A stretch of 64,000 bases of DNA, taken from positions 1 to 64,000 of IMG/VR virus record IMGVR_UViG_3300023179_004149. The stretch is one strand, 5' to 3'. The notes beneath the pieces are model-generated. The model was given only the letters and a program-made list of their open reading frames with translations. It did no database searches and was not told where the DNA came from. This document shows positions 12,319 to 34,839 of the stretch, piece by piece. Numbering within the stretch: position 1 is the stretch's first letter; the number at the start of each line of letters is the position of its first letter. Made by a program: the position numbers and the translations under genes.

Positions 12319-12720
12319 TTAGTTATTTTCTGATTTAATGTCTGCGATAATCATATCGATGAATAGCGGTGTGTTCCCAGCCAGGATGAAATTATTTAGT
12401 TTATCGAATGAAACCCAGAAATATTCTGAGTGTTCACGTTCTGATAAAATAACTGGCGGGATCGAATCTATTGTTGTGTAGTAACAACTAACCATAAATT
12501 CACCACTACCAGATAGACACTCGCCCACATATATTAGATCAGATACTTTTATTCCAGTTTCTTCAAACGTTTCTCTGATGGCACCTTCGAGTGTAGTTTC
12601 ATCTAGTTCGACTTTACCACCTGGTATACACCATCCGTTTGATTTACCCACTCGGTATTGTCTTTTCAGTAATAAGATCCTATCACCGACAACGATACCG
12701 CAAACAGCTGATTTTTTCAT
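12319..12720 (-). CDS. NUDIX hydrolase
   Basis: Nudix box PGGKVELDETTLEGAIRETFEETG; likely start MKKSAVCG just after a promoter. Confidence 0.88.
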   Translation of the reverse strand: MKKSAVCGIVVGDRILLLKRQYRVGKSNGWCIPGGKVELDETTLEGAIRETFEETGIKVSDLIYVGECLSGSGEFMVSCYYTTIDSIPPVILSEREHSEYFWVSFDKLNNFILAGNTPLFIDMIIADIKSENN

Positions 12721-12803
12721 TTCTTTTTGTTTAGGATACAAAAGTAAGAATTTTTTTTGACATAACCAAATAAAAATGGGATAACTTTCGTTATCCCATT
12801 GCG

Positions 12804-12877
12804 TTGTCCTGGTGAGAGTTGAACTCACTACCTTCACCTTATCAGGGTGACAATCTAAACCGTTGATATACAGGACA
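12804..12877 (-). tRNA. tRNA-Ile(GAT)
   Basis: TCACC-CTGATAA-GGTGA. Confidence 0.9.
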
Positions 12878-13000
12878 AAATAAGGTCATTGTTACAACAT
12901 CTCTCACCCACTTTCTTGGCAGGGTATCCATCATGCGTTCCGTTAACCGATGTATAATTTTATAGCCCTTGACGGAACAAGCTGGGCAACCAATTTTTTG

Positions 13001-13072
13001 GGGTCAAGCACGGTATCGATCCGAGTTCTCCTGATTCACAGTCAGGCACATCACCTTAATGCTTCAAGACCC
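13001..13072 (-). tRNA. tRNA-His(GTG)
   Basis: CCTGA-CTGTGAA-TCAGG; G-1:C73 possible; A54-type T loop. Confidence 0.85.
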
Positions 13073-13080
13073 ATGTGTTG

Positions 13081-13153
13081 TAGCCTTATGGTGAATCGAA
13101 CACCAGTTGTCGTCTTGTAAGGACGATGCACTAAACCACTGTGCTATAAGGCT
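13081..13153 (-). tRNA. tRNA-Val(TAC)
   Basis: TCGTC-CTTACAA-GACGA. Confidence 0.9.
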
Positions 13154-13160
13154 ATTAATG

Positions 13161-13232
13161 TTGTGAGTACGAGGTTCGAACTCGTATGACGAATGTATAA
13201 GATTCGCAGCCTAACCATTAGCTGAACTCACA
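13161..13232 (-). tRNA. tRNA-Ile(TAT)
   Basis: CGAAT-CTTATAC-ATTCG; TGTGAGT/ACTCACA acceptor. Confidence 0.82.
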
Positions 13233-13315
13233 ATAATTCTGTCTTTCCAGATGTCAAATATACTATTGACTTGTCAATACTTTAATATTGACGCTTACCG
13301 CATATTAGGGTTAGG

Positions 13316-13387
13316 TGCGCCTTGCTGGTATCGATCCAGCCCCCGCAGCTTAAAAGGCTGCTGCCTACACCTGTTTGCCAAAAGCGC
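13316..13387 (-). tRNA. tRNA-Lys(TTT)
   Basis: GCAGC-CTTTTAA-GCTGC. Confidence 0.88.
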
Positions 13388-13390
13388 ATT

Positions 13391-13840
13391 TTATTGTTCC
13401 AACCATTTATACCAACCTTGTTGTTTAGCTGTTCGCCTATGGTGACAGTTAGCACATCTGGTTTCGCATTTTTTTAATTCTTTCTCTATGGTACCCCAAA
13501 CAGTGGAATATACCATATTTGAAATCACACCCTTTTTATCAACACCATCCATATGATCCGACTGGAGAACTATGGGGTCAGTTTCACCACAAACAACACA
13601 AGGATGATCTAAATAATGCTGATACAATTTTCTCCTATTCTCTTCAATTTCAGCTTTCCTTCGTTTTCTAATCACCGCTTTATGGTGGTTGGTATTTTCT
13701 GAATAATATTGTTTTGATCGTTCATTACTACATTTTCTACAAATATTATTATATCCGTCTTTTTTACCCTTATTTTTATTAAATTCGGATATTTTTTTCT
13801 CGTCTTTGCACTTAGTGCATATTTTCTTATTTTCTTCCAT
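13391..13840 (-). mobile_element. HNH endonuclease gene inserted in the tRNA cluster
   Basis: CTKC...CRKC Zn motif; CVVCGE...LQSDH...CANCHHRRT HNH core. Confidence 0.85.
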
Positions 13841-13881
13841 AATAATAAATATAAGGAAAAAACTTTTAAAATAAACACTGG

Positions 13882-13919
13882 TTAAAAGTGTGGTGCTCTA
13901 CCGATTAAGCTACGAGACC
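13882..13919 (-). pseudogene. 5' half of a tRNA-Lys(TTT), cut just after the anticodon loop
   Basis: GGTCTCG-TA-GCTTAATCGGTAGAGC-A-CCACA-CTTTTAA, then unrelated sequence leading into the HNH gene. Confidence 0.8.
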
Positions 13920-13926
13920 ATTAAAG

Positions 13927-13999
13927 TAGCTCCGAAGGGACTTGAACCCCCAACCCGCTGAGTAAGAATCAGCTGCTCTGCCAATTAAGCTACGAAGCT
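13927..13999 (-). tRNA. tRNA-Lys(CTT)
   Basis: GCTGA-TTCTTAC-TCAGC. Confidence 0.88.
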
Positions 14000-14003
14000 A
14001 TGT

Positions 14004-14041
14004 AAAACTAAAAATGCTCCAGGGTTCACCTGGAGCATTTG
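14004..14041 (-). terminator. Attenuator terminator 2
   Basis: AAATGCTCCAGG/CCTGGAGCATTT 12-bp stem plus T-tract directly before tRNA-Lys(CTT). Confidence 0.85.
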
Positions 14042-14064
14042 CTAAATTTTATTCTTAAACCCTG

Positions 14065-14145
14065 TTAAGAATTAGACAAATAGTCACCAGGCATAGTTTT
14101 AGCTATGACGTGTTTAATATGCTTTATAATGACTAACTGTTTCAT
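14065..14145 (-). CDS. Leader peptide 2 (26 aa, MKQLVIIKHIKHVIAKTMPGDYLSNS)
   Basis: Manual translation; V/I/K/H core; 3' part complementary to the terminator left arm. Confidence 0.8.
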   Translation of the reverse strand: MKQLVIIKHIKHVIAKTMPGDYLSNS

Positions 14146-14247
14146 CTTATTGATTGTTTATGTTGTTTTAAAATTGTTCTCTTTAATAATTATTACAAAA
14201 GTACGAAAAGTTCTTGATTTTGCAAAGTTTTTTTCAAATATTTTTTT

Positions 14248-14907
14248 TTAATATCCGTAATATATCATTACGTTCTTTTTCCAGTTAAATGTCTTATAAA
14301 TGTTTATAAGCCCAAATATACCGTACTCATACTTCCAACTGGTTGTAATGGTATCACCATGTTCTAAACTAAACGGTGGTAATCCACACCACTCCATATT
14401 CATTGACTTAACATGATTTATCATTTCAATAATAGCTGTCTGTTCTTCGCCAGTTAATTTGGTTCCATCAAAAGTATATTTTGTAAACGGCTCCGAACTC
14501 CAATGGTATTCACTCTCAATTGACTTAAGAAATTCAGACGATCTTTCTTTTTCTCGAGAAAACGGTGCCACCATCACTTGATAGTACTTCTTTATTCTTT
14601 CCTGATAGGTCGAAATCACATAAGCCAGAAACTCTTTAGTCACAATATAAAAATCATATTCATCGTAACGAGCCATTAACTCCTTATTCTTAAAAAATCT
14701 TTTTAATGATTTTTTTGGTGGTTCAAACCCATCGTATTTACCAAATTCATACAACTCAGTACCATACTCATATACGCCTTTATACCAATCATCGTCAGAA
14801 ACATGTTCCTTATTAGGATAATGGTCTTTAAGTTGTTCAAAAGACATTGACTTGATTTTATTGTACTCTCGTTTAGGCATCGAGCCTATGTATGTTCTAT
14901 AACCCAT
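14248..14907 (-). CDS. Hypothetical protein
   Basis: 219 aa ORF. Confidence 0.7.
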   Translation of the reverse strand: MGYRTYIGSMPKREYNKIKSMSFEQLKDHYPNKEHVSDDDWYKGVYEYGTELYEFGKYDGFEPPKKSLKRFFKNKELMARYDEYDFYIVTKEFLAYVISTYQERIKKYYQVMVAPFSREKERSSEFLKSIESEYHWSSEPFTKYTFDGTKLTGEEQTAIIEMINHVKSMNMEWCGLPPFSLEHGDTITTSWKYEYGIFGLINIYKTFNWKKNVMIYYGY

Positions 14908-14954
14908 TAAATATTACAGCTTTAAACCGACTCACTTTTTTTGTAAAAATATTT

Positions 14955-15539
14955 TTAGTAAGCTAATAGCTCATCAGCGGAGAGTATTTCAGCGTAAAAA
15001 TCTATAGCTACGGTACCCTTACTATGGGGTTCTATTTCAGAACCTCTGTATTTAACACCAGTAAAAAATACCTCACCCCTTATTTCTTTTGTGATAAACT
15101 CAAAATCGTTGATGTTGAACTTATCATTTTCGTCAACATCCAGTTCGACATTGATAAAGTTACCCTTTTCTTCTTGGAAGCAAACCAAATAATCACCAGG
15201 TTCTATTTTACTCTCATCAACAACAACCGTCTCTGATTTTCTTAGTTCGCTGAGTGAGTAATCTTTGGTTTTGTATGTGTGTTCTTCATCACCGAACTTT
15301 ATTACGACTTCAATATTGTAATAAGCACCGTATGTATGATCAATATTATCATTTTCATACCATGGGCCAATGAATTGGTCATCGGTTAATTCTTGGTTAT
15401 CGTCATAGAATCCAACATGATCTATTAACTCAGCGTCGTATTTTTGTTTCCAAAAAGTCGCTTGTTCATTAGTTAGTTTACCTATGGTGTGTTCACGACC
15501 GTAACCATCAATAATAACTGATACCTTTTTCGTAGCCAT
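14955..15539 (-). CDS. Hypothetical acidic protein
   Basis: 194 aa ORF. Confidence 0.7.
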   Translation of the reverse strand: MATKKVSVIIDGYGREHTIGKLTNEQATFWKQKYDAELIDHVGFYDDNQELTDDQFIGPWYENDNIDHTYGAYYNIEVVIKFGDEEHTYKTKDYSLSELRKSETVVVDESKIEPGDYLVCFQEEKGNFINVELDVDENDKFNINDFEFITKEIRGEVFFTGVKYRGSEIEPHSKGTVAIDFYAEILSADELLAY

Positions 15540-15871
15540 TACATTAAGGTTGAGCCAGATAAACCATCTAATTCGATCTTATCGCCCCTCATTGGTGGCA
15601 TAATCATTGCTGATGATTCAACACCCATGATCCTAACGGGTTCCAGGTTGGTTATGAATGGTAATGTAATAAACATTAAATCATTCACATTTTCTAGTCT
15701 GTTGCCGATATTTGTCATAACGGTTCTTTCGTCACCCTCGCTGAAGAATACGGTAAGTTTAAGCATCTTATCGCTATTTGGCATCCTTTCAACTGATTGG
15801 ATTGTACCCAACTTTATCTCTAGTTGTTTTTCTAATTGGAGATACGTCTCTATATTAATTTTCTTTTTCAT
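15539..15871 (-). CDS. Stand-alone tRNA-binding OB-fold protein (Trbp111/CsaA/MetRS C-terminal-like)
   Basis: LEIKLGTIQSVERMPNSDKMLKLTV...ERTVMTNI...ITNLEP..IMGVESSAMI. Confidence 0.85.
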   Translation of the reverse strand: MKKKINIETYLQLEKQLEIKLGTIQSVERMPNSDKMLKLTVFFSEGDERTVMTNIGNRLENVNDLMFITLPFITNLEPVRIMGVESSAMIMPPMRGDKIELDGLSGSTLM

Positions 15872-16062
15872 CTTTCTCGTTAAAATACTGTTTTAATTCG
15901 TCAATGGTACAGTCCAATCGATATGATATCATATCTTTGGACATGGATAAAAGATAATTTTTAACATCTGTTAAAAAAGATATCATCTCTTCTTTCCACT
16001 CTTCAGTACCGACAATATGTTTTGTCTTCATCTTTATAGTTTTATATCTATAAATATCAGAG

Positions 16063-16135
16063 TGATTCCAGTGGGGATCGAACCCACACCTAATTGATTT
16101 AGAGTCAACTATACTGCCGATTATACTATGGAACC
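16063..16135 (-). tRNA. Amber suppressor tRNA (CTA)
   Basis: GTTGA-CTCTAAA-TCAAT anticodon arm; complete cloverleaf, short variable loop, A73. Confidence 0.85.
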
Positions 16136-16260
16136 GTTAAAACGCGCACTATGGGTTAAATGCGCACTCACCCAAAAATGATATATAGTTCACGGACATA
16201 ATTCCGCTGGGTTTTCACCGTTAGAACTGGATATCAACCATTCTTATTGTGACGTTTTAG

Positions 16261-16334
16261 AGGACAAGGATAGGATCGAACTACCGTTTGAGACTTTGCA
16301 GGTCCCCGCCTAATAACCACTCGGCCACTTGTCC
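16261..16334 (-). tRNA. tRNA-Cys(GCA)
   Basis: GGGAC-CTGCAAA-GTCTC; U73. Confidence 0.88.
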
Positions 16335-16705
16335 AGTTATTGGTACCAACTTACGGGTCGGCAACCAATGTCTTTACTTTGTTTTATTCCAATTTTTCCA
16401 GTGGGTTGGCGGCTCCCATAATTCCTCTGGTTTATAATTGTAAGGTGTCACCGATGGGTTCAAAAAACGATCTACTTTTTTACTATTAATAAGTAAGTAA
16501 AAACCCTCAAAAAAGTAACGTACCATAAACATTCTACAACCCATTAGTACCGCTAAACCGATAATTTTTAATAGTATCATTTTCTCTGTTTTTAAATTAG
16601 AATACAAAAGTAAGAAAGGTTTTTGAATTAAACAAGTTTTAATGATCCATCTGGAAACCGTCTTTGGTTCATATGGTTCAAACATTTTTTTATCCATAGG
16701 TATTT

Positions 16706-17971: not shown

Positions 17972-18385
17972 TGGTGGAGGTAGGGGCATCGAAGCCCCGT
18001 GTCAAGTAATAGCAAATTAACTTTCATTCACATGTTTATCAACTTTTTCTAAAGGTGAAAAATAAATGGAACTCTATTTGTCGGGGTAACATACCGTGGT
18101 ATGTTGCGCTGTCGTCAATACCGAATCCATTGTCCTGGGTATTGCAACATTTAAACCCCCTCACGCTTTGCAGATTTTAGCGACTGTTGTCGATAACCCC
18201 GAAGGATTAAGCGAATGCAGGTTCTGCAACCTCAACAGGCTGACCGTTGAGAACGATGTCTCCGTCAGCGGTAATATAGCTTGCGCCATTTAACTGTTCA
18301 CATAGGTTATTTAAGTGTTTCCAATGCTAACACTACATGCATCAAATTAAAGAACTAATTTACCGATCAAAACCTGGTTACCCCC
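17972..18385 (-). ncRNA. ssrA: tmRNA with a 26-aa tag (GASYITADGDIVLNGQPVEVAEPAFA*, 18287-18207)
   Basis: 5' GGGGGTAACCAGGTTTTGAT; 3' GACACGGGGCTTCGATGCCCCTACCTCCACCA with G3:U70; UUAAAU just before the GGC resume codon. Confidence 0.9.
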
Positions 18386-27773: not shown

Positions 27774-28213
27774 ATTAAGTTCCTGGGCAACCATATGATA
27801 CAAGCGCTTGTACTGATTGGGAACGCCGTTACGTTATAACATCCTAAGATTTATAAGAGGCTTGACGGCCCACCTTATTTTTAATCCCCACGAACATACA
27901 TCCATTCACATAGATGACCCAGGATTTGAACCTGCAAAGTCCGTTTATGTATTCCTACCACACCTTCCGCTGGGACAGGGATAATTTTAAAAGTAAAGAA
28001 CTTTACCCATTCTTCATGAGCGGTTTGGCATAACCGCAGGGGAATCCTTAAACCATCCATTCATTTTTTAAAAGGGAATGGAACCTTTCAGGGTAACCCC
28101 TATCCTCACTACCATCCATTTTTAGGAAAATGGAAAACCAATATTCAACTCGATTGCGATAATACCAGGAATTGCCTCCATTATCAATATTAACCAATTC
28201 GAGTTTTTTATCT

Positions 28214-28651: not shown

Positions 28652-28889
28652 AAATGAGGCGATTATTCGGTACGCCTCGATTCCCTATCCACCCATTTGC
28701 GGTGGCTCCAGCGGCATCTGTTTTTTTTAAACCTTTCTACTAATCGTTTGTCTATACGACCAGGTTCATTCAGACACGGTAGTGTCAACTCTGACGAGAA
28801 CGCCATGTGCAGCGTTAATAATTGATTGATTTTTCATTTTGCTCAACCAAGAAAACACGGTGACTTTTAGTGAGTTTCCCCTCTCATTG

Positions 28890-29010
28890 TTGGGCACGAG
28901 GGAATTGAACCCCCACCTCTCGCTTATGATGCAAATTGTCGTTAAATGTGCTGAATTAAATCCCTACGGATTGTCCGATGTTTAACGTGCTACCATTACA
29001 CTAATGCCCA
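28890..29010 (-). ncRNA. tRNA-like RNA with a large insertion carrying a CAGCA box
   Basis: TGGGCAT/GTGCCCA acceptor, D arm and T arm intact; insertion with AATCC-GTAG-GGATT hairpin then TTCAGCA; residual CAT loop. Confidence 0.7.
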
Positions 29011-29021
29011 ATATTTTTTCG

Positions 29022-29093
29022 AGGACACACTCAGAACCGACCTGAGAACTCATGCTTACAAGGCAAGTATTTTTCCAGCTAAACTATGCGTCC
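29022..29093 (-). tRNA. tRNA-Thr(TGT), atypical T loop
   Basis: CTTGC-CTTGTAA-GCATG; CTCAG-GTCGGTT-CTGAG. Confidence 0.7.
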
Positions 29094-29235
29094 AATTCAA
29101 CTTTTAAATTATCCCCAGAGTTGCAACTGTGCTGGAATACGATCCAGAGGTTTAGTGGCTGGTAACGTAATATACCTTAACCAGACTTTCCTATCTTCGA
29201 TCCATGATGGTCGACCATCAGAGGGCTTTTGTTAG

Positions 29236-29514: not shown

Positions 29515-29599
29515 TGGCGGTCTCGATGGGATTCGAACCCATGATCTTCGCCGTGACGCGTTACAGGGCGACAGGGACGACCAACTCCCCTACAAGACC
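29515..29599 (-). tRNA. tRNA-Asp-like gene with a 7-nt insertion in the anticodon loop
   Basis: TCGCC-CTGTAACGCGTCAC-GGCGA; G73; encoded CCA. Confidence 0.75.
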
Positions 29600-30045: not shown

Positions 30046-30151
30046 AGGATGTTTTTTGTTTTTTGTTTTTATTTCAGACGGGGCTCGAACCCGTGACCCA
30101 AGGCTCTAACCAACTGAGCTACCAAAATGGATTAATTGCGGAACACATCCT
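30046..30151 (-). ncRNA. CAGCAA-box RNA variant (CCGCAA) enclosing tRNA D and T arms with no anticodon arm
   Basis: AGGATGT-GTTCCGCAA...GCTCAGTTGGTTAGAGC-CTTGGGTC-ACGGG-TTCGAGC-CCCGT...ACATCCT. Confidence 0.7.
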
Positions 30152-30238: not shown

Positions 30239-30253
30239 AAATACTTTAATAAG

Positions 30254-30378
30254 TCCCGACAAGAGGACTCGAACCTCTACCTTTTTCGTTTAAAGAAATT
30301 GTTTTTAGATAATGACTTGCTGTAACCATCCACTCTGGATGACTCTGTTTTTTAATGCTACCATTACACCATGTCGGA
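30254..30378 (-). ncRNA. tRNA-like RNA with a large insertion carrying a CAGCAA box
   Basis: TCCGACA/TGTCGGG acceptor, D arm and T arm intact; insertion CATCCA-GAG-TGGATG-GTTACAGCAA. Confidence 0.72.
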
Positions 30379-33240: not shown

Positions 33241-34839
33241 TTACTCTATTTTAAATGTAGTAAAACCTATATTATTATTTACATCCCTGACGAAAGTAAT
33301 ATGTTGGGCGCGTCCATCATTATGAATGATAACGTGTGATTGTAACCAGGAGCTTGCACCTTTGTTATAACCCATTCTCAATTTTGTTGATGTTCCAACA
33401 GCTAAAGCACCATCTTTTCTACCTGGTGTGTGATAGTGACCGACAATAATCTTTGTATTCAATGTTCTAAACTGTTGTAATGAACCTTTTGAACCGTTAG
33501 TTCCCATATCGCCGTGCTGACCGAGTTCCCAGTTTTTAACCCTATACGATTCATCACGACCTAATGTTTTATATGCTGGATATTTTTGATTAATGATTTC
33601 AGGTATTACACCTTTAATATTTTCTGGGTCTTTCTCGTATTGTTCGAGTAACATGGCACTATAATTCATATATAGTTTTGAATTCTTACTAGTGGGTTGT
33701 TTTTTCCAGTCTTCATTTTTTAACCACCTATCTAGGAAATCATCGTGATTACTTCTAACAATCACAACGTTTTTAAATTTACTAAAAACAGCTAAACCAG
33801 CAATCATCGTATCTATTTCACGTTGAAGTGAATTCTGGTTGTGTACTTCTTTTGAATATTGTACAAACGGATCTTTCATCTCATGATGGTTGATTGAAAA
33901 CCCATCAAAGACATCATGTAATACGACGTGTTCTGGTTCTATCTTATCCAACAAATTAAGTGTTGTGTCGATCACATCCTGGTCGTGATTACCATAGTGT
34001 AAATCACCTAGCACAATAGCAGCAACAGAATCAATTTTTTTAACCACACCATCTTGAACGTTATAACAAAGATCCGTAAAAGAACCGTGTTTATCATCAG
34101 CCGTCACCTGGCGAACATAGAACGTTTCTTTATCTTTAATTTCAACGATGACGAAACCATATGTGTGATGGAATTCACCTTTTTTACCCGATTTCGAATC
34201 GGTATAATTCATTTTAGTTACCGCACCAGTGGTCAACATCATCTTTGGTTTATTACCTTTAAGTACGGGTATCATTTCCATTTGAACTTTCGGTGATCCA
34301 AATATTGATGAATTAATACCGCTCATACCTTGTAAACCAGACATTGGGTTTGTTGCTGTTGGTTGTATCTTAACGTCAGACATTATAGACAAATATTTGT
34401 GAATATTATGTCTTCCAGCATCCATATATTTTTCAACCTCTTCCACCCAATAATCCTGATCAGAATCTTCAAATACCGAGGTCGGATTTTTATATCTACC
34501 AAGCATTATATGAATATCAGCATCGATATGTTTAGCATAAGCTTCAATATTTTTATAAAATCCTGAGTGTACGGGTGTTGCGTTTTGGGCCCATGTGACA
34601 ATAAAACGAGATTTTGTTTTATCGTGTTCCCTTAATTTAGCCGCTTCATATTGTTCTGAAATGACTTCCATTTTTTCTTTAAAACCGAGTTTTTCGGAAC
34701 ACCATTTCCTTACTGTTCTTTCCGAACGACCAAAGAACGTCATCAGAGTTTTCATTCTCTCATCCCATGATAAATCTTTATTCCAATAGATCTCTTTGGC
34801 TTTGACTATTTGATCTTGTGTTAGCTCATTAAACTTCAT
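33241..34839 (-). CDS. Calcineurin-like metallophosphoesterase with an N-terminal HTH-like region
   Basis: LGDLHYG, LHDVFDG, SNHDD, QHGD, GHYHTP. Confidence 0.7.
   Translation of the reverse strand: MKFNELTQDQIVKAKEIYWNKDLSWDERMKTLMTFFGRSERTVRKWCSEKLGFKEKMEVISEQYEAAKLREHDKTKSRFIVTWAQNATPVHSGFYKNIEAYAKHIDADIHIMLGRYKNPTSVFEDSDQDYWVEEVEKYMDAGRHNIHKYLSIMSDVKIQPTATNPMSGLQGMSGINSSIFGSPKVQMEMIPVLKGNKPKMMLTTGAVTKMNYTDSKSGKKGEFHHTYGFVIVEIKDKETFYVRQVTADDKHGSFTDLCYNVQDGVVKKIDSVAAIVLGDLHYGNHDQDVIDTTLNLLDKIEPEHVVLHDVFDGFSINHHEMKDPFVQYSKEVHNQNSLQREIDTMIAGLAVFSKFKNVVIVRSNHDDFLDRWLKNEDWKKQPTSKNSKLYMNYSAMLLEQYEKDPENIKGVIPEIINQKYPAYKTLGRDESYRVKNWELGQHGDMGTNGSKGSLQQFRTLNTKIIVGHYHTPGRKDGALAVGTSTKLRMGYNKGASSWLQSHVIIHNDGRAQHITFVRDVNNNIGFTTFKIE

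What the first reader, a model, noticed from the sequence alone, without database searches (positions are those of the whole stretch)
14004..14145. Attenuator 2: VIIKHIKHVIAK leader before Lys, Lys, Ile(TAT), Val, His, Ile(GAT) tRNAs
11 of 12 codons at residues 5-16 are Val/Ile/Lys/His. Both AAA and AAG, and both ATT and ATA, are used, mirroring Lys(TTT)/(CTT) and Ile(GAT)/(TAT). CCTGGTGACTATTTG (14091-14077) pairs with CAAATGCTCCAGG (14041-14029) as antiterminator. TAGTCATT (14135-14128) pairs with GGTGACTA as anti-antiterminator.
Basis: partly seen in the sequence, partly recalled or inferred. Interest (0 to 1): 0.9.

Follow-up and report, generated by a model that had tools for sequence, protein, structure and literature searches.

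The report
Codon-matched attenuator before phage tRNA operon
A jumbo phage places a 26-codon mini-gene rich in Lys, Ile, Val and His codons plus a transcription stop signal in front of its Lys/Ile/Val/His tRNA genes, apparently so that these tRNAs are made only when ribosomes stall for lack of them, a use of leader-peptide attenuation that I could not find described.

Summary
On the minus strand the order is: Bacteroidota-type promoter (14226-14196), 26-codon ORF MKQLVIIKHIKHVIAKTMPGDYLSNS (14145-14065), intrinsic terminator (14040-14012 plus U tract), then tRNA-Lys(CTT) from 13999. Lys(TTT), Ile(TAT), Val(TAC), His(GTG) and Ile(GAT) follow, and a second terminator (12800-12775) closes the operon.

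Residues 5-16 are 11/12 Val/Ile/Lys/His. No other 12-residue window in the six-frame translation of the 64 kb reaches even 10/12.

Folding gives the classical four-segment design: 1:2 helix, 2:3 antiterminator, 3:4 terminator. The antiterminator can form only while a ribosome sits on codons 3-14.

Two other tRNA operons in the window have the same layout with their own matched leaders: LRQRQLQLLQLR before Arg/Leu/Leu/Gln/Gln, and SWSASSYEPSYPAYE before Tyr/Pro/Pro/Ser/Trp/Ser/Glu. Related jumbo phages carry orthologous and additional leaders whose composition follows their own tRNA sets.

I read it as a ribosome-mediated transcription attenuator whose regulated genes are tRNAs. The mechanism is a known kind; the target and the phage setting appear new. 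Regulation itself is untested. Confidence 0.8, interest 0.87.

The parts
14196..14226 (-). Promoter of Bacteroidota type: -33 TTTG (14226-14223), 19-nt spacer, -7 TACTTTTG (14203-14196). Predicted transcription start near 14190.
   Evidence: The motif TTNNTTACTTTTGYA occurs 17 times in the window against 1.08 expected, always on the minus strand. One copy lies at 14208-14194. Sequence read. The start site is inferred.
14146..14190 (-). A/U-rich, unstructured 5' leader ahead of the start codon, with no Shine-Dalgarno sequence.
   Evidence: Unpaired in the centroid fold. All three leaders in the window start ...AAAATGA(A/G)AAAC.
14065..14145 (-). Leader ORF of 26 codons plus TAA: MKQLVIIKHIKHVIAKTMPGDYLSNS.
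   Evidence: The ORF is intact in the orthologues L237, L240, L155, L238, L242 and L244.
14098..14133 (-). Regulatory codon run, codons 5-16 (VIIKHIKHVIAK): 11/12 are cognate to the tRNAs of the operon.
   Evidence: the only region of the window with >=10/12 in {H,I,K,V}; P = 1.4e-6. Between the window and L240 the run (codons 5-14) shows 4 synonymous and no non-synonymous changes, and the Leu-to-Val change at codon 4 just upstream adds a cognate residue.
14118..14140 (-). Segment 1 (ACAGUUAGUCAUUAUAAAGCAUA), the 5' strand of the 1:2 anti-antiterminator helix. It overlaps codons 2-9.
   Evidence: Minimum-free-energy and centroid folds of 14190-14000 (z = -3.84, 0 of 200 shuffles fold as well).
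14076..14095 (-). Segment 2 (UAUGCCUGGUGACUAUUUGU), codons 17-24. It pairs with segment 1 or with segment 3.
   Evidence: The RNAalifold consensus of five orthologues is the 2:3 pairing, with CUGG/CCAG invariant and several pairs changed on both sides.
14051..14072 (-). Small 8-bp hairpin (AUUCUUAA-CAGGGU-UUAAGAAU) that contains the stop codon and sits in the loop of the antiterminator.
14004..14041 (-). Segments 3 and 4, the intrinsic terminator. 12-bp stem AAAUGCUCCAGG / CCUGGAGCAUUU (14040-14012), loop UGAAC, then UUAGUUUU (14011-14004). Segment 3 (14041-14029) is shared with the antiterminator.
   Evidence: Terminator scan, -16.7 kcal/mol for the core stem and -21.1 for the terminator region folded alone. 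L240 keeps the hairpin with a different stem sequence (AAAUCCCCAGG / CCUGGGGAUUU).
13926..13999 (-). tRNA-Lys(CTT), first gene of the operon. It starts 4 nt after the U tract.
13391..13920 (-). 5' half of a tRNA-Lys(TTT)-like gene (13920-13880), followed by a 149-aa ORF with an HNH-like motif (13840-13391). It looks like an insertion inside the operon.
   Evidence: Read from the sequence. Pfam gives no hit, so the HNH call rests on the motif only. The Lys(ctt)-Lys(ttt) spacing is the same in L237.
12803..13387 (-). tRNA-Lys(TTT) 13387-13314, Ile(TAT) 13232-13160, Val(TAC) 13153-13080, His(GTG) 13071-13001, Ile(GAT) 12877-12803.
   Evidence: No promoter motif and no minus-strand terminator between 13999 and 12803.
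12775..12800 (-). Terminator that closes the tRNA operon (11-bp stem plus U tract). The next promoter motif is at 12751-12737.

Best explanation
This is a ribosome-mediated (leader-peptide) transcription attenuator that gates a phage tRNA operon.

Proposed sequence of events:
1. Transcription starts at the promoter near 14190, and a ribosome begins translating the 26-codon leader.
2. If Lys, Ile, Val and His codons are decoded quickly, the ribosome runs on over segment 2 (codons 17-24) to the stop codon. Segment 3 then pairs with segment 4, and RNA polymerase terminates at 14011-14004, just before tRNA-Lys.
3. If no ribosome loads at all, segment 1 pairs with segment 2 and the terminator forms again.
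4. If decoding of the run at codons 5-16 is slow because the matching charged tRNAs are scarce, the stalled ribosome covers segment 1. Segment 2 pairs with segment 3 as an antiterminator, and polymerase reads through into Lys(CTT), Lys(TTT), Ile(TAT), Val, His and Ile(GAT).

The result is negative feedback: the phage supplies a group of tRNAs only when that group limits translation. The phage and its relatives carry one such sensor per tRNA operon, each written in the codons of that operon.

Shown from sequence: the parts, their order, the statistics, the alternative pairings, and the conservation and co-variation across relatives.

Inferred: translation of the ORF, the start site, the response itself, and that tRNA shortage rather than amino-acid shortage is the natural signal.
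For: 1. Composition: 11/12 cognate residues, unique in 63,489 windows, P = 1.4e-6.
2. Layout: promoter, ORF, terminator, then the tRNA 4 nt after the U tract, with a second terminator closing the operon.
3. Structure: the fold of 14190-14000 has z = -3.84 and shows 1:2 plus 3:4. In the nascent transcript the 2:3 antiterminator is the best fold (about -19 to -20 kcal/mol) with the A site on codons 3-14. It is impossible from codon 15 to the stop, where only -5 to -16 kcal/mol of unrelated pairing remains.
4. Two more operons in the window have the same design. LRQRQLQLLQLR (12/12, P about 1e-10) precedes Arg, Leu, Leu, Gln, Gln. SWSASSYEPSYPAYE precedes Tyr, Pro, Pro, Ser, Trp, Ser, Glu.
5. Orthologues of this leader:
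   - L237 MKQVVIIKHIKHVIAK... before K,K,I,K,V,V,H,I.
   - L240 MKQVVIIKHIKHVITF... before K,I.
   - The L155 clade MNT[MI]VNIIKSIKHISVK... before K,V,I,S,(H), where Ser codons appear in the leader together with a tRNA-Ser in the operon.
6. Other operon types in relatives carry their own matched leaders. TTGTTYQPKQYTQGGKP precedes P,P,Q,Y,T,G,G,K,K,K. NIGMTFGRVNDH precedes H,F,M,N,D... WPYSCPAAPAYP precedes Y,P,P,W,C. In a leader-by-operon score matrix the true assignment beats all other 719 permutations.
7. In 13 of 13 leaders the best partner of the terminator's 5' arm lies inside the ORF (codons 16-35), from overlapping the last codons of the regulatory run to a few codons after it. The RNAalifold consensus of the D-type alignment is the antiterminator.
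8. A terminator directly before a tRNA is rare: 10 of 348 and 6 of 152 tRNAs scanned. Most of these cases carry a matched leader.
9. No Rfam family, including T-box and the known leader families, matches the leader.
Against: - There are no expression, Term-seq or ribosome-profiling data. The phage is known only from metagenomes, and its host is inferred from the promoter type.
- At equilibrium the terminator is more stable than the antiterminator, so the switch must be kinetic. This is also true of classical attenuators, but it is not demonstrated here.
- The 1:2 helix is only partly conserved: L240 loses two or three pairs without compensation.
- Both Val codons in the run are GTC, the rarest Val codon (0.08). 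tRNA-Val(UAC) reads GTC only if its U34 is suitably modified, so part of the signal may report host tRNAs.
- One residue of the run is Ala, and the window has no tRNA-Ala.
- The tRNA-His gene has three U-U mismatches in its stems.
- In leaders B and E the stop codon lies in the antiterminator loop, so a ribosome paused at the stop would not mask segment 2.
- Transcription-translation coupling in Bacteroidota is little studied.
Confidence: 0.8

Rival explanations
1. The structure is the same attenuator, but the natural signal is amino-acid starvation or the general charging state of the host, as in biosynthetic operons. The phage would use it to read host physiology rather than to balance its tRNA supply.
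For: A stalled ribosome cannot tell a missing tRNA from an uncharged one. The architecture matches classical amino-acid attenuators. The conserved rare GTC codons may report a host tRNA.
Against: More tRNA does not relieve amino-acid starvation, so the feedback would have no benefit. Each leader follows the exact tRNA content of its own operon, including gain of Ser or Cys codons together with the matching tRNA. That is expected if the product corrects the measured shortage.
Confidence: 0.12
2. The terminator is a constitutive, leaky damper or an RNA-processing and stability element. The short ORF is not translated, and its composition has no function.
For: There is no direct evidence of translation. 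Hairpins next to tRNAs can serve processing. Individual segment 2:3 duplex scores are only modestly better than shuffles (z from -0.8 to -3.5).
Against: - The composition is unique in the window.
- ORFs are intact in every relative.
- Changes within the run are synonymous, while the nucleotide sequence of segment 2 is conserved.
- Leader and operon match across six operon types.
- The antiterminator partner always lies inside the ORF, at or just after the end of the run.
Confidence: 0.05
3. A translation-independent RNA sensor, similar to a T-box, in which the codon run binds tRNA anticodons directly.
For: The run displays codons for every tRNA of the operon.
Against: There is no T-box or other Rfam match, and no specifier-loop or T-box sequence. 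A start codon, reading frame and stop codon are kept in all relatives, and synonymous codons change freely. That points to decoding by ribosomes rather than to fixed base pairing.
Confidence: 0.02
4. The ORF encodes a functional micro-protein, and the terminator simply ends its transcript.
For: It is a conserved small ORF with its own promoter.
Against: The tRNAs would then have no promoter. Peptide sequences differ completely between operons yet follow tRNA content. Residues after the run change freely except where they overlap segment 2.
Confidence: 0.01

Closest known systems
Multivalent leader-peptide attenuators of amino-acid biosynthetic operons in enterobacteria (ilvL of ilvGMEDA for Ile/Leu/Val, thrL for Thr/Ile; also trpL, hisL, pheL, leuL). 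The principle is described in PMC1183508; the gene names are from my own knowledge.
   Same: A short translated leader with a run of regulatory codons for more than one amino acid. Mutually exclusive 1:2, 2:3 and 3:4 hairpins. An intrinsic terminator before the first regulated gene. Ribosome position decides between termination and readthrough.
   Different: The regulated genes here are tRNAs, not enzymes, so the output restores decoding capacity rather than amino-acid supply. The element is in a phage and behind a Bacteroidota-type promoter without a Shine-Dalgarno sequence. Each operon has its own leader covering 3-7 amino acids. None of the curated Rfam leader families matches.
pheM leader of the E. 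coli pheST operon (phenylalanyl-tRNA synthetase), from my own knowledge.
   Same: Leader-peptide attenuation applied to a gene of the translation apparatus rather than to biosynthesis. It responds to the level of charged tRNA.
   Different: It controls a protein-coding synthetase and senses one amino acid. It is cellular, not viral.
T-box riboswitches
   Same: They sense tRNA status and switch between terminator and antiterminator ahead of translation-related genes.
   Different: T-boxes bind uncharged tRNA directly through one specifier codon and a conserved T-box sequence, without translation. Neither feature is present here, and the ORF is conserved.
tRNA gene clusters of large phages, thought to offset codon-usage mismatch, host tRNA decay or tRNA-cleaving defences
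   Same: A large set of phage tRNAs, 31 or more in this window, grouped in clusters.
   Different: Eight full-text literature searches found no description of such clusters being gated by codon-matched leader peptides.

Membership tests
Ribosome-mediated (leader-peptide) transcription attenuator | Short ORF with start and stop codons in the 5' leader of the regulated transcript | tested here: met
   26-codon ORF at 14145-14065, downstream of the promoter motif at 14208-14194. It is intact in six orthologous loci.
Ribosome-mediated (leader-peptide) transcription attenuator | Run of regulatory codons cognate to what the operon supplies | tested here: met
   11/12 V/I/K/H, unique in the window, P = 1.4e-6. 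Leader-operon matching across relatives: 1 of 720 permutations is as good.
Ribosome-mediated (leader-peptide) transcription attenuator | Intrinsic terminator between the leader ORF and the first regulated gene | tested here: met
   12-bp stem with 6 GC pairs plus a U tract at 14040-14004. The tRNA starts at 13999.
Ribosome-mediated (leader-peptide) transcription attenuator | Antiterminator that uses the 5' arm of the terminator and a segment inside or near the end of the ORF | tested here: met
   14091-14077 pairs with 14041-14029. This is the best fold of the nascent transcript and the consensus structure of the five-sequence alignment, with pairs changed on both sides.
Ribosome-mediated (leader-peptide) transcription attenuator | Anti-antiterminator (1:2) that forms when the leader is not translated | tested here: inconclusive
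   An 18-bp interrupted helix is predicted in the window. L240 loses two or three pairs without compensation, and the L155 clade was not analysed for it.
Ribosome-mediated (leader-peptide) transcription attenuator | Geometry: a ribosome on the regulatory codons leaves segment 2 free, and a ribosome further on masks it | tested here: met
   Footprint simulation: the antiterminator forms with the A site on codons 3-14 and cannot form from codon 15 to the stop. A cruder test gives a similar pattern in 12 of 15 leaders.
Ribosome-mediated (leader-peptide) transcription attenuator | Readthrough rises when the cognate charged tRNA is limiting | not testable with these tools
   Needs reporter, in vitro or infection experiments.
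Amino-acid biosynthesis leader families curated in Rfam (His, Leu, Thr, Trp and Phe leaders) | Match to the family covariance model; regulated genes are biosynthetic enzymes | tested here: not met
   No such hit at E <= 0.1 in 8000-32000. The regulated genes are tRNAs.
T-box riboswitch | Specifier loop and conserved T-box sequence (Rfam model) | tested here: not met
   No hit at E <= 0.1.

The most novel reading that the evidence does not exclude
Jumbo phages of Bacteroidota, and possibly unrelated huge phages (candidate in L051, a 498-kb contig), run a modular tRNA homeostat. tRNA genes are sorted into operons, and each operon is gated by its own leader peptide written in the codons of exactly those tRNAs. 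The phage would thus measure decoding capacity group by group and top up only what is depleted. This could serve as a built-in answer to host tRNA decay or to tRNA-cleaving defence nucleases.
Probability: 0.5. Interest if true: 0.92.

Novelty: new variant of a known kind. Interest (0 to 1): 0.87.

Why it matters
Leader-peptide attenuation is a textbook mechanism, but it is known for amino-acid biosynthesis and a few synthetase genes. Cellular tRNA genes are thought to be controlled mainly at the promoter.

Here the same device appears to control tRNA genes, in a virus, and in a programmable form. The leader is in effect a list of the operon's anticodons, and it changes when the operon gains or loses a tRNA.

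If this is confirmed:
- It gives a direct reason why large phages group tRNAs by amino acid.
- It shows that phage tRNA supply is demand-driven rather than constitutive.
- It offers a testable link to tRNA-targeting host defences.
- It provides a simple sequence signature (short ORF, terminator, tRNA) for finding regulated tRNA operons in metagenomes.
- It provides natural, compact sensors of the availability of specific tRNAs.

Tried and rejected
- GenBank phage search with 12700-16400 gave only tRNA-length hits in unrelated phages. The three gut-phage hits have single tRNAs and no leader.
- Synteny through the 219-aa gene just upstream (14907-14248): 336 homologues at 64% identity or less, and 29 IMG/VR loci plus two 20-kb walks, but no tRNA clusters next to them. 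This gene is not linked to the operon in relatives.
- A tRNA-Lys(CTT) pattern fetched 35 loci from many unrelated tRNA-rich phages. None had a convincing leader except the window's own contig and the candidate in L051.
- I recalled that E. coli tRNA-Phe genes might have Phe leaders. The pheV upstream region shows none, so I dropped this lead.
- The Thg1 anchor gave 80 loci, but only 10 had tRNAs. It was useful only for the L156 contig.
- The genome-contig scan with the D-leader pattern gave one chance hit in a Candidatus Doudnabacteria MAG.
- No matched leader was found in the window before the Phe/Asn/Asp cluster (30834 onward) or before Cys plus the suppressor tRNA (16334 onward). Relatives do have an H/F/M/N/D leader.
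- Formal pair counting on the terminator was not done, because the 3' arm is out of register in alignment A2. I report per-sequence hairpins instead.
- A codon-level (anticodon) match beyond the amino-acid level could not be shown.

Full report
**What the window is.** The window is roughly the first 64 kb of a 320,934-bp viral contig, IMGVR_UViG_3300023179_004149. GC content is about 34%. It carries at least 33 tRNA genes, all on the minus strand between 8.4 and 30.8 kb. It also encodes a tRNA nucleotidyltransferase and tail-fibre-like proteins. No close relative exists among GenBank phages. A promoter motif of the Bacteroidota kind (TTTG, about 19 nt, TAnnTTTG; here TTNNTTACTTTTGYA) occurs 17 times against 1.08 expected, always on the minus strand and in intergenic positions. 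This suggests a Bacteroidota host; that is an inference.

**The observation.** On the minus strand the order is:
- promoter: -33 TTTG at 14226-14223 and -7 TACTTTTG at 14203-14196;
- a 45-nt A/U-rich leader;
- the ORF at 14145-14065, MKQLVIIKHIKHVIAKTMPGDYLSNS;
- an 8-bp hairpin over the stop codon;
- a terminator with a 12-bp stem (14040-14012) and U tract (to 14004);
- tRNA-Lys(CTT) from 13999.

The operon then contains a 5' half of a tRNA-Lys(TTT)-like gene with an HNH-like ORF behind it. Next come Lys(TTT), Ile(TAT), Val(TAC), His(GTG) and Ile(GAT). His(GTG) is detected by Rfam only, at 38 bits. A second terminator at 12800-12775 closes the operon, directly followed by the next promoter motif. 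There is no promoter motif and no terminator inside the operon. There is also no room for a promoter between the leader terminator and the first tRNA. The tRNAs can therefore be transcribed only by reading through the terminator.

**Is it more than chance?** Residues 5-16 are 11/12 Val/Ile/Lys/His. These four amino acids make up 0.24 of residues in the long ORFs, which gives P = 1.4e-6. Among all 63,489 stop-free 12-residue windows of the six-frame translation, the only ones with at least 10/12 are the overlapping windows of this ORF. Using both Lys, both Ile and both His codon types is consistent with the idea, but genome codon usage would give that anyway. One unusual point is that both Val codons are GTC, the rarest Val codon (0.08). 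This is kept in L237 and L240.

**Structure.** The RNA from 14190 to 14000 folds better than all 200 shuffles (z = -3.84).

I then folded the nascent transcript, cut before the 3' arm of the terminator, with a 29-nt ribosome footprint moved codon by codon:
- From codon 15 to the stop codon the footprint covers segment 2. Only unrelated pairings of -5 to -16 kcal/mol remain, so the terminator is free to form.

This is the logic of classical attenuation as set out in PMC1183508. At equilibrium the terminator wins, so the switch has to be kinetic, as in the classical cases.

**The pattern repeats in the window.** Two other tRNA operons have the same order of promoter, short ORF, terminator and tRNA.
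- Before Arg(ACG), Leu(AAG), Leu(TAG), Gln(CTG) and Gln(TTG) lies MKNITNILRQRQLQLLQLREGAS... (20138-20037). It has twelve consecutive Leu/Arg/Gln codons. These are the only windows with at least 10/12 in {L,Q,R} in the 64 kb, P about 1e-10.
- Before Tyr, Pro, Pro, Ser, Trp, Ser and Glu lies MRNSVLTSWSASSYEPSYPAYEHG... (9773-9654).

Both have a G-rich segment 2 inside the ORF that mimics the 3' arm of the terminator. In leader E these are GGGGUUUCU, AGAAACCCC and GGGGUUUUU. In these two leaders the stop codon lies in the antiterminator loop, so the geometry is less tidy than in the leader under study.

**Relatives.**
- The neighbouring 219-aa gene has many homologues, but none sits next to tRNAs.
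- A conserved 532-aa protein (33241-34839) gave 80 related loci at 61-85% identity.
- Walking along one contig, plus one pattern scan of metagenomes, gave orthologues of this leader.

D-type leaders found:
- L237: MKQVVIIKHIKHVIAKTMPGDYLSNS before Lys, Lys, Ile, Lys, Val, Val, His, Ile.
- L240: MKQVVIIKHIKHVITFVMPGDYLHEF before Lys, Ile (short contig).
- The L155/L156/L238/L242/L244 clade: MNT[MI]VNIIKSIKHISVKNWAGLVLPNLC before Lys, Val, Ile, Ser and, further on, His.

In the L155 clade the leader has two Ser codons and the operon has a tRNA-Ser. The window has neither.

Between the window and L240, the run shows four synonymous changes. The one replacement nearby, Leu to Val at codon 4, adds a cognate residue. 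Residues after the run change freely, and the nucleotides of segment 2 are kept. That split is what translation-level selection on the run and RNA-level selection on segment 2 would produce. L240 keeps the terminator with a different stem sequence. The RNAalifold consensus of the five aligned leaders is the 2:3 antiterminator, with CUGG/CCAG invariant and several pairs changed on both sides.

**Other operon types in relatives carry their own leaders**:
- LSLQRQLQLQLL and LQRQQLLQPLQ before Arg/Leu/Gln sets.
- TTGTTYQPKQYTQGGKP before Pro, Pro, Gln, Tyr, Thr, Gly, Gly, Lys, Lys, Lys.
- NIGMTFGRVNDH and HMINIGFTFGRVNDH before His, Phe, Met, Asn, Asp sets.
- WPYSCPAAPAYP before Tyr, Pro, Pro, Trp, Cys.

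I scored residues 3-20 of each leader against each operon's amino-acid set. Every leader fits its own operon type (z from 2.4 to 5.9) and not the others. For six distinct types, the true assignment beats all 719 other permutations. In 13 of 13 leaders the best partner of the terminator's 5' arm lies inside the ORF, at or just after the end of the run.

A terminator immediately upstream of a tRNA is rare: 10 of 348 tRNAs in the window plus unrelated loci, and 6 of 152 in relatives. Most of those cases are matched leaders. One candidate of the same design sits in an unrelated, higher-GC 498-kb phage contig (L051). Its leader is rich in K, A, R, N, Q, F and Y, and it precedes Ala, Phe, Gln, Arg, Ala, Ala, Tyr, Lys..., with a GGGGCUU/AAGCCCC antiterminator. 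Its statistics are borderline.

**Interpretation.** The best reading is a ribosome-mediated attenuator that gates a tRNA operon. Slow decoding of the cognate codons leads to readthrough and more of exactly those tRNAs, which is negative feedback on decoding capacity. I favour tRNA shortage as the natural signal over amino-acid starvation. More tRNA can correct only the former, and the leaders follow tRNA content closely. This point is inferred, not shown. What depletes the tRNAs is open: it could be codon-usage mismatch, loss of host tRNA during infection, or tRNA-cleaving defence systems.

**Comparison with what is known.** The device works like the multivalent ilvL and thrL attenuators and like pheM of pheST. 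It meets the structural criteria of that class, with the 1:2 helix only partly supported. It is not a member of any curated Rfam leader family or of the T-box family, and its regulated genes are tRNAs. Eight full-text literature searches found no description of leader peptides before tRNA genes or in phage tRNA clusters. A remembered lead about E. coli tRNA-Phe genes was checked and not borne out. The library does not cover all journals, so an earlier report cannot be excluded.

**Verdict.** It is a new variant of a known kind of regulation. It recurs three times in this genome and across a family of jumbo phages. Confidence that it is a functional attenuator is 0.8. Interest is 0.87.

Noticed in passing
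window 20138-19968 (-) and 9773-9598 (-): Two more leader-plus-terminator units of the same design. MKNITNILRQRQLQLLQLREGAS... precedes Arg, Leu, Leu, Gln, Gln. MRNSVLTSWSASSYEPSYPAYEHG... precedes Tyr, Pro, Pro, Ser, Trp, Ser, Glu.
   Followed up: yes
window 30930-30850 (-) and 20275-20165 (-); L140 1935-2040: A conserved long stem starts at the predicted 5' end of the transcript (CAATTCGGGA ... TCCGATGAATTG), with compensatory changes between copies. Before the Phe tRNA it encloses a short ORF and no terminator follows. Function unknown; it may stabilise or process the RNA.
   Followed up: partly
window 9855-9805 (-) and 30150-30045 (-): A repeated hairpin element (GGATGTGTTC[AC]GCAATT ... 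AAAACATCCTGA). The second copy encloses a truncated tRNA-like piece (Rfam tRNA hit at 30070-30128).
   Followed up: no
window 13920-13391 (-): The 5' half of a tRNA-Lys(TTT)-like gene ends in its anticodon loop. It is followed by a 149-aa ORF with an HNH-like motif (no Pfam hit) and then an intact but divergent tRNA-Lys(TTT). This looks like a homing-endonuclease insertion that brought a replacement tRNA. L237 has the same spacing.
   Followed up: partly
window 17972-18385 (-): A tmRNA-like RNA (Rfam RF00023, 41.6 bits, below the gathering score of 47, E = 1e-13) lies just downstream of tRNA-Leu(TAA) and operon B. A terminator at 17925-17897 closes it. ARAGORN did not call it.
   Followed up: no
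window 30253-30378 (-), 28889-29094 (-); L006 4790-6630: tRNA-like genes interrupted by insertions of 40-130 nt (ARAGORN intron mode). A relative, L006, has a whole row of them.
   Followed up: no
window 16062-16135 (-) and 29515-29599 (-): An amber-suppressor-type tRNA (anticodon CTA) and a tRNA with an 8-nt anticodon loop (TGTA). These may be recoding or frameshift-suppressor tRNAs.
   Followed up: no
window 28046-28142 (-): A match to wcaG RNA (RF01761) just below threshold: 39 bits against 42.
   Followed up: no
L154/L155 19910-20573: Relatives encode a Thg1-family protein (tRNA-His guanylyltransferase) beside their Lys/Val/Ile/Ser/His tRNA operon.
   Followed up: no
L051 5010-5230 (IMGVR_UViG_3300020429_000529, 498 kb): An unrelated, higher-GC huge phage has a candidate attenuator of the same kind. 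The leader MMSVRSKARTNVNQRKQAWRQFAYAGFAARNAKGLGPRG... plus a terminator precedes Ala, Phe, Gln, Arg, Ala, Ala, Tyr, Lys...
   Followed up: partly
window 14133-14131 and 14109-14107 (-): Both Val codons of the leader are GTC, the rarest Val codon in the window (8%). They are conserved in L237 and L240, although the operon's tRNA-Val has anticodon TAC.
   Followed up: partly
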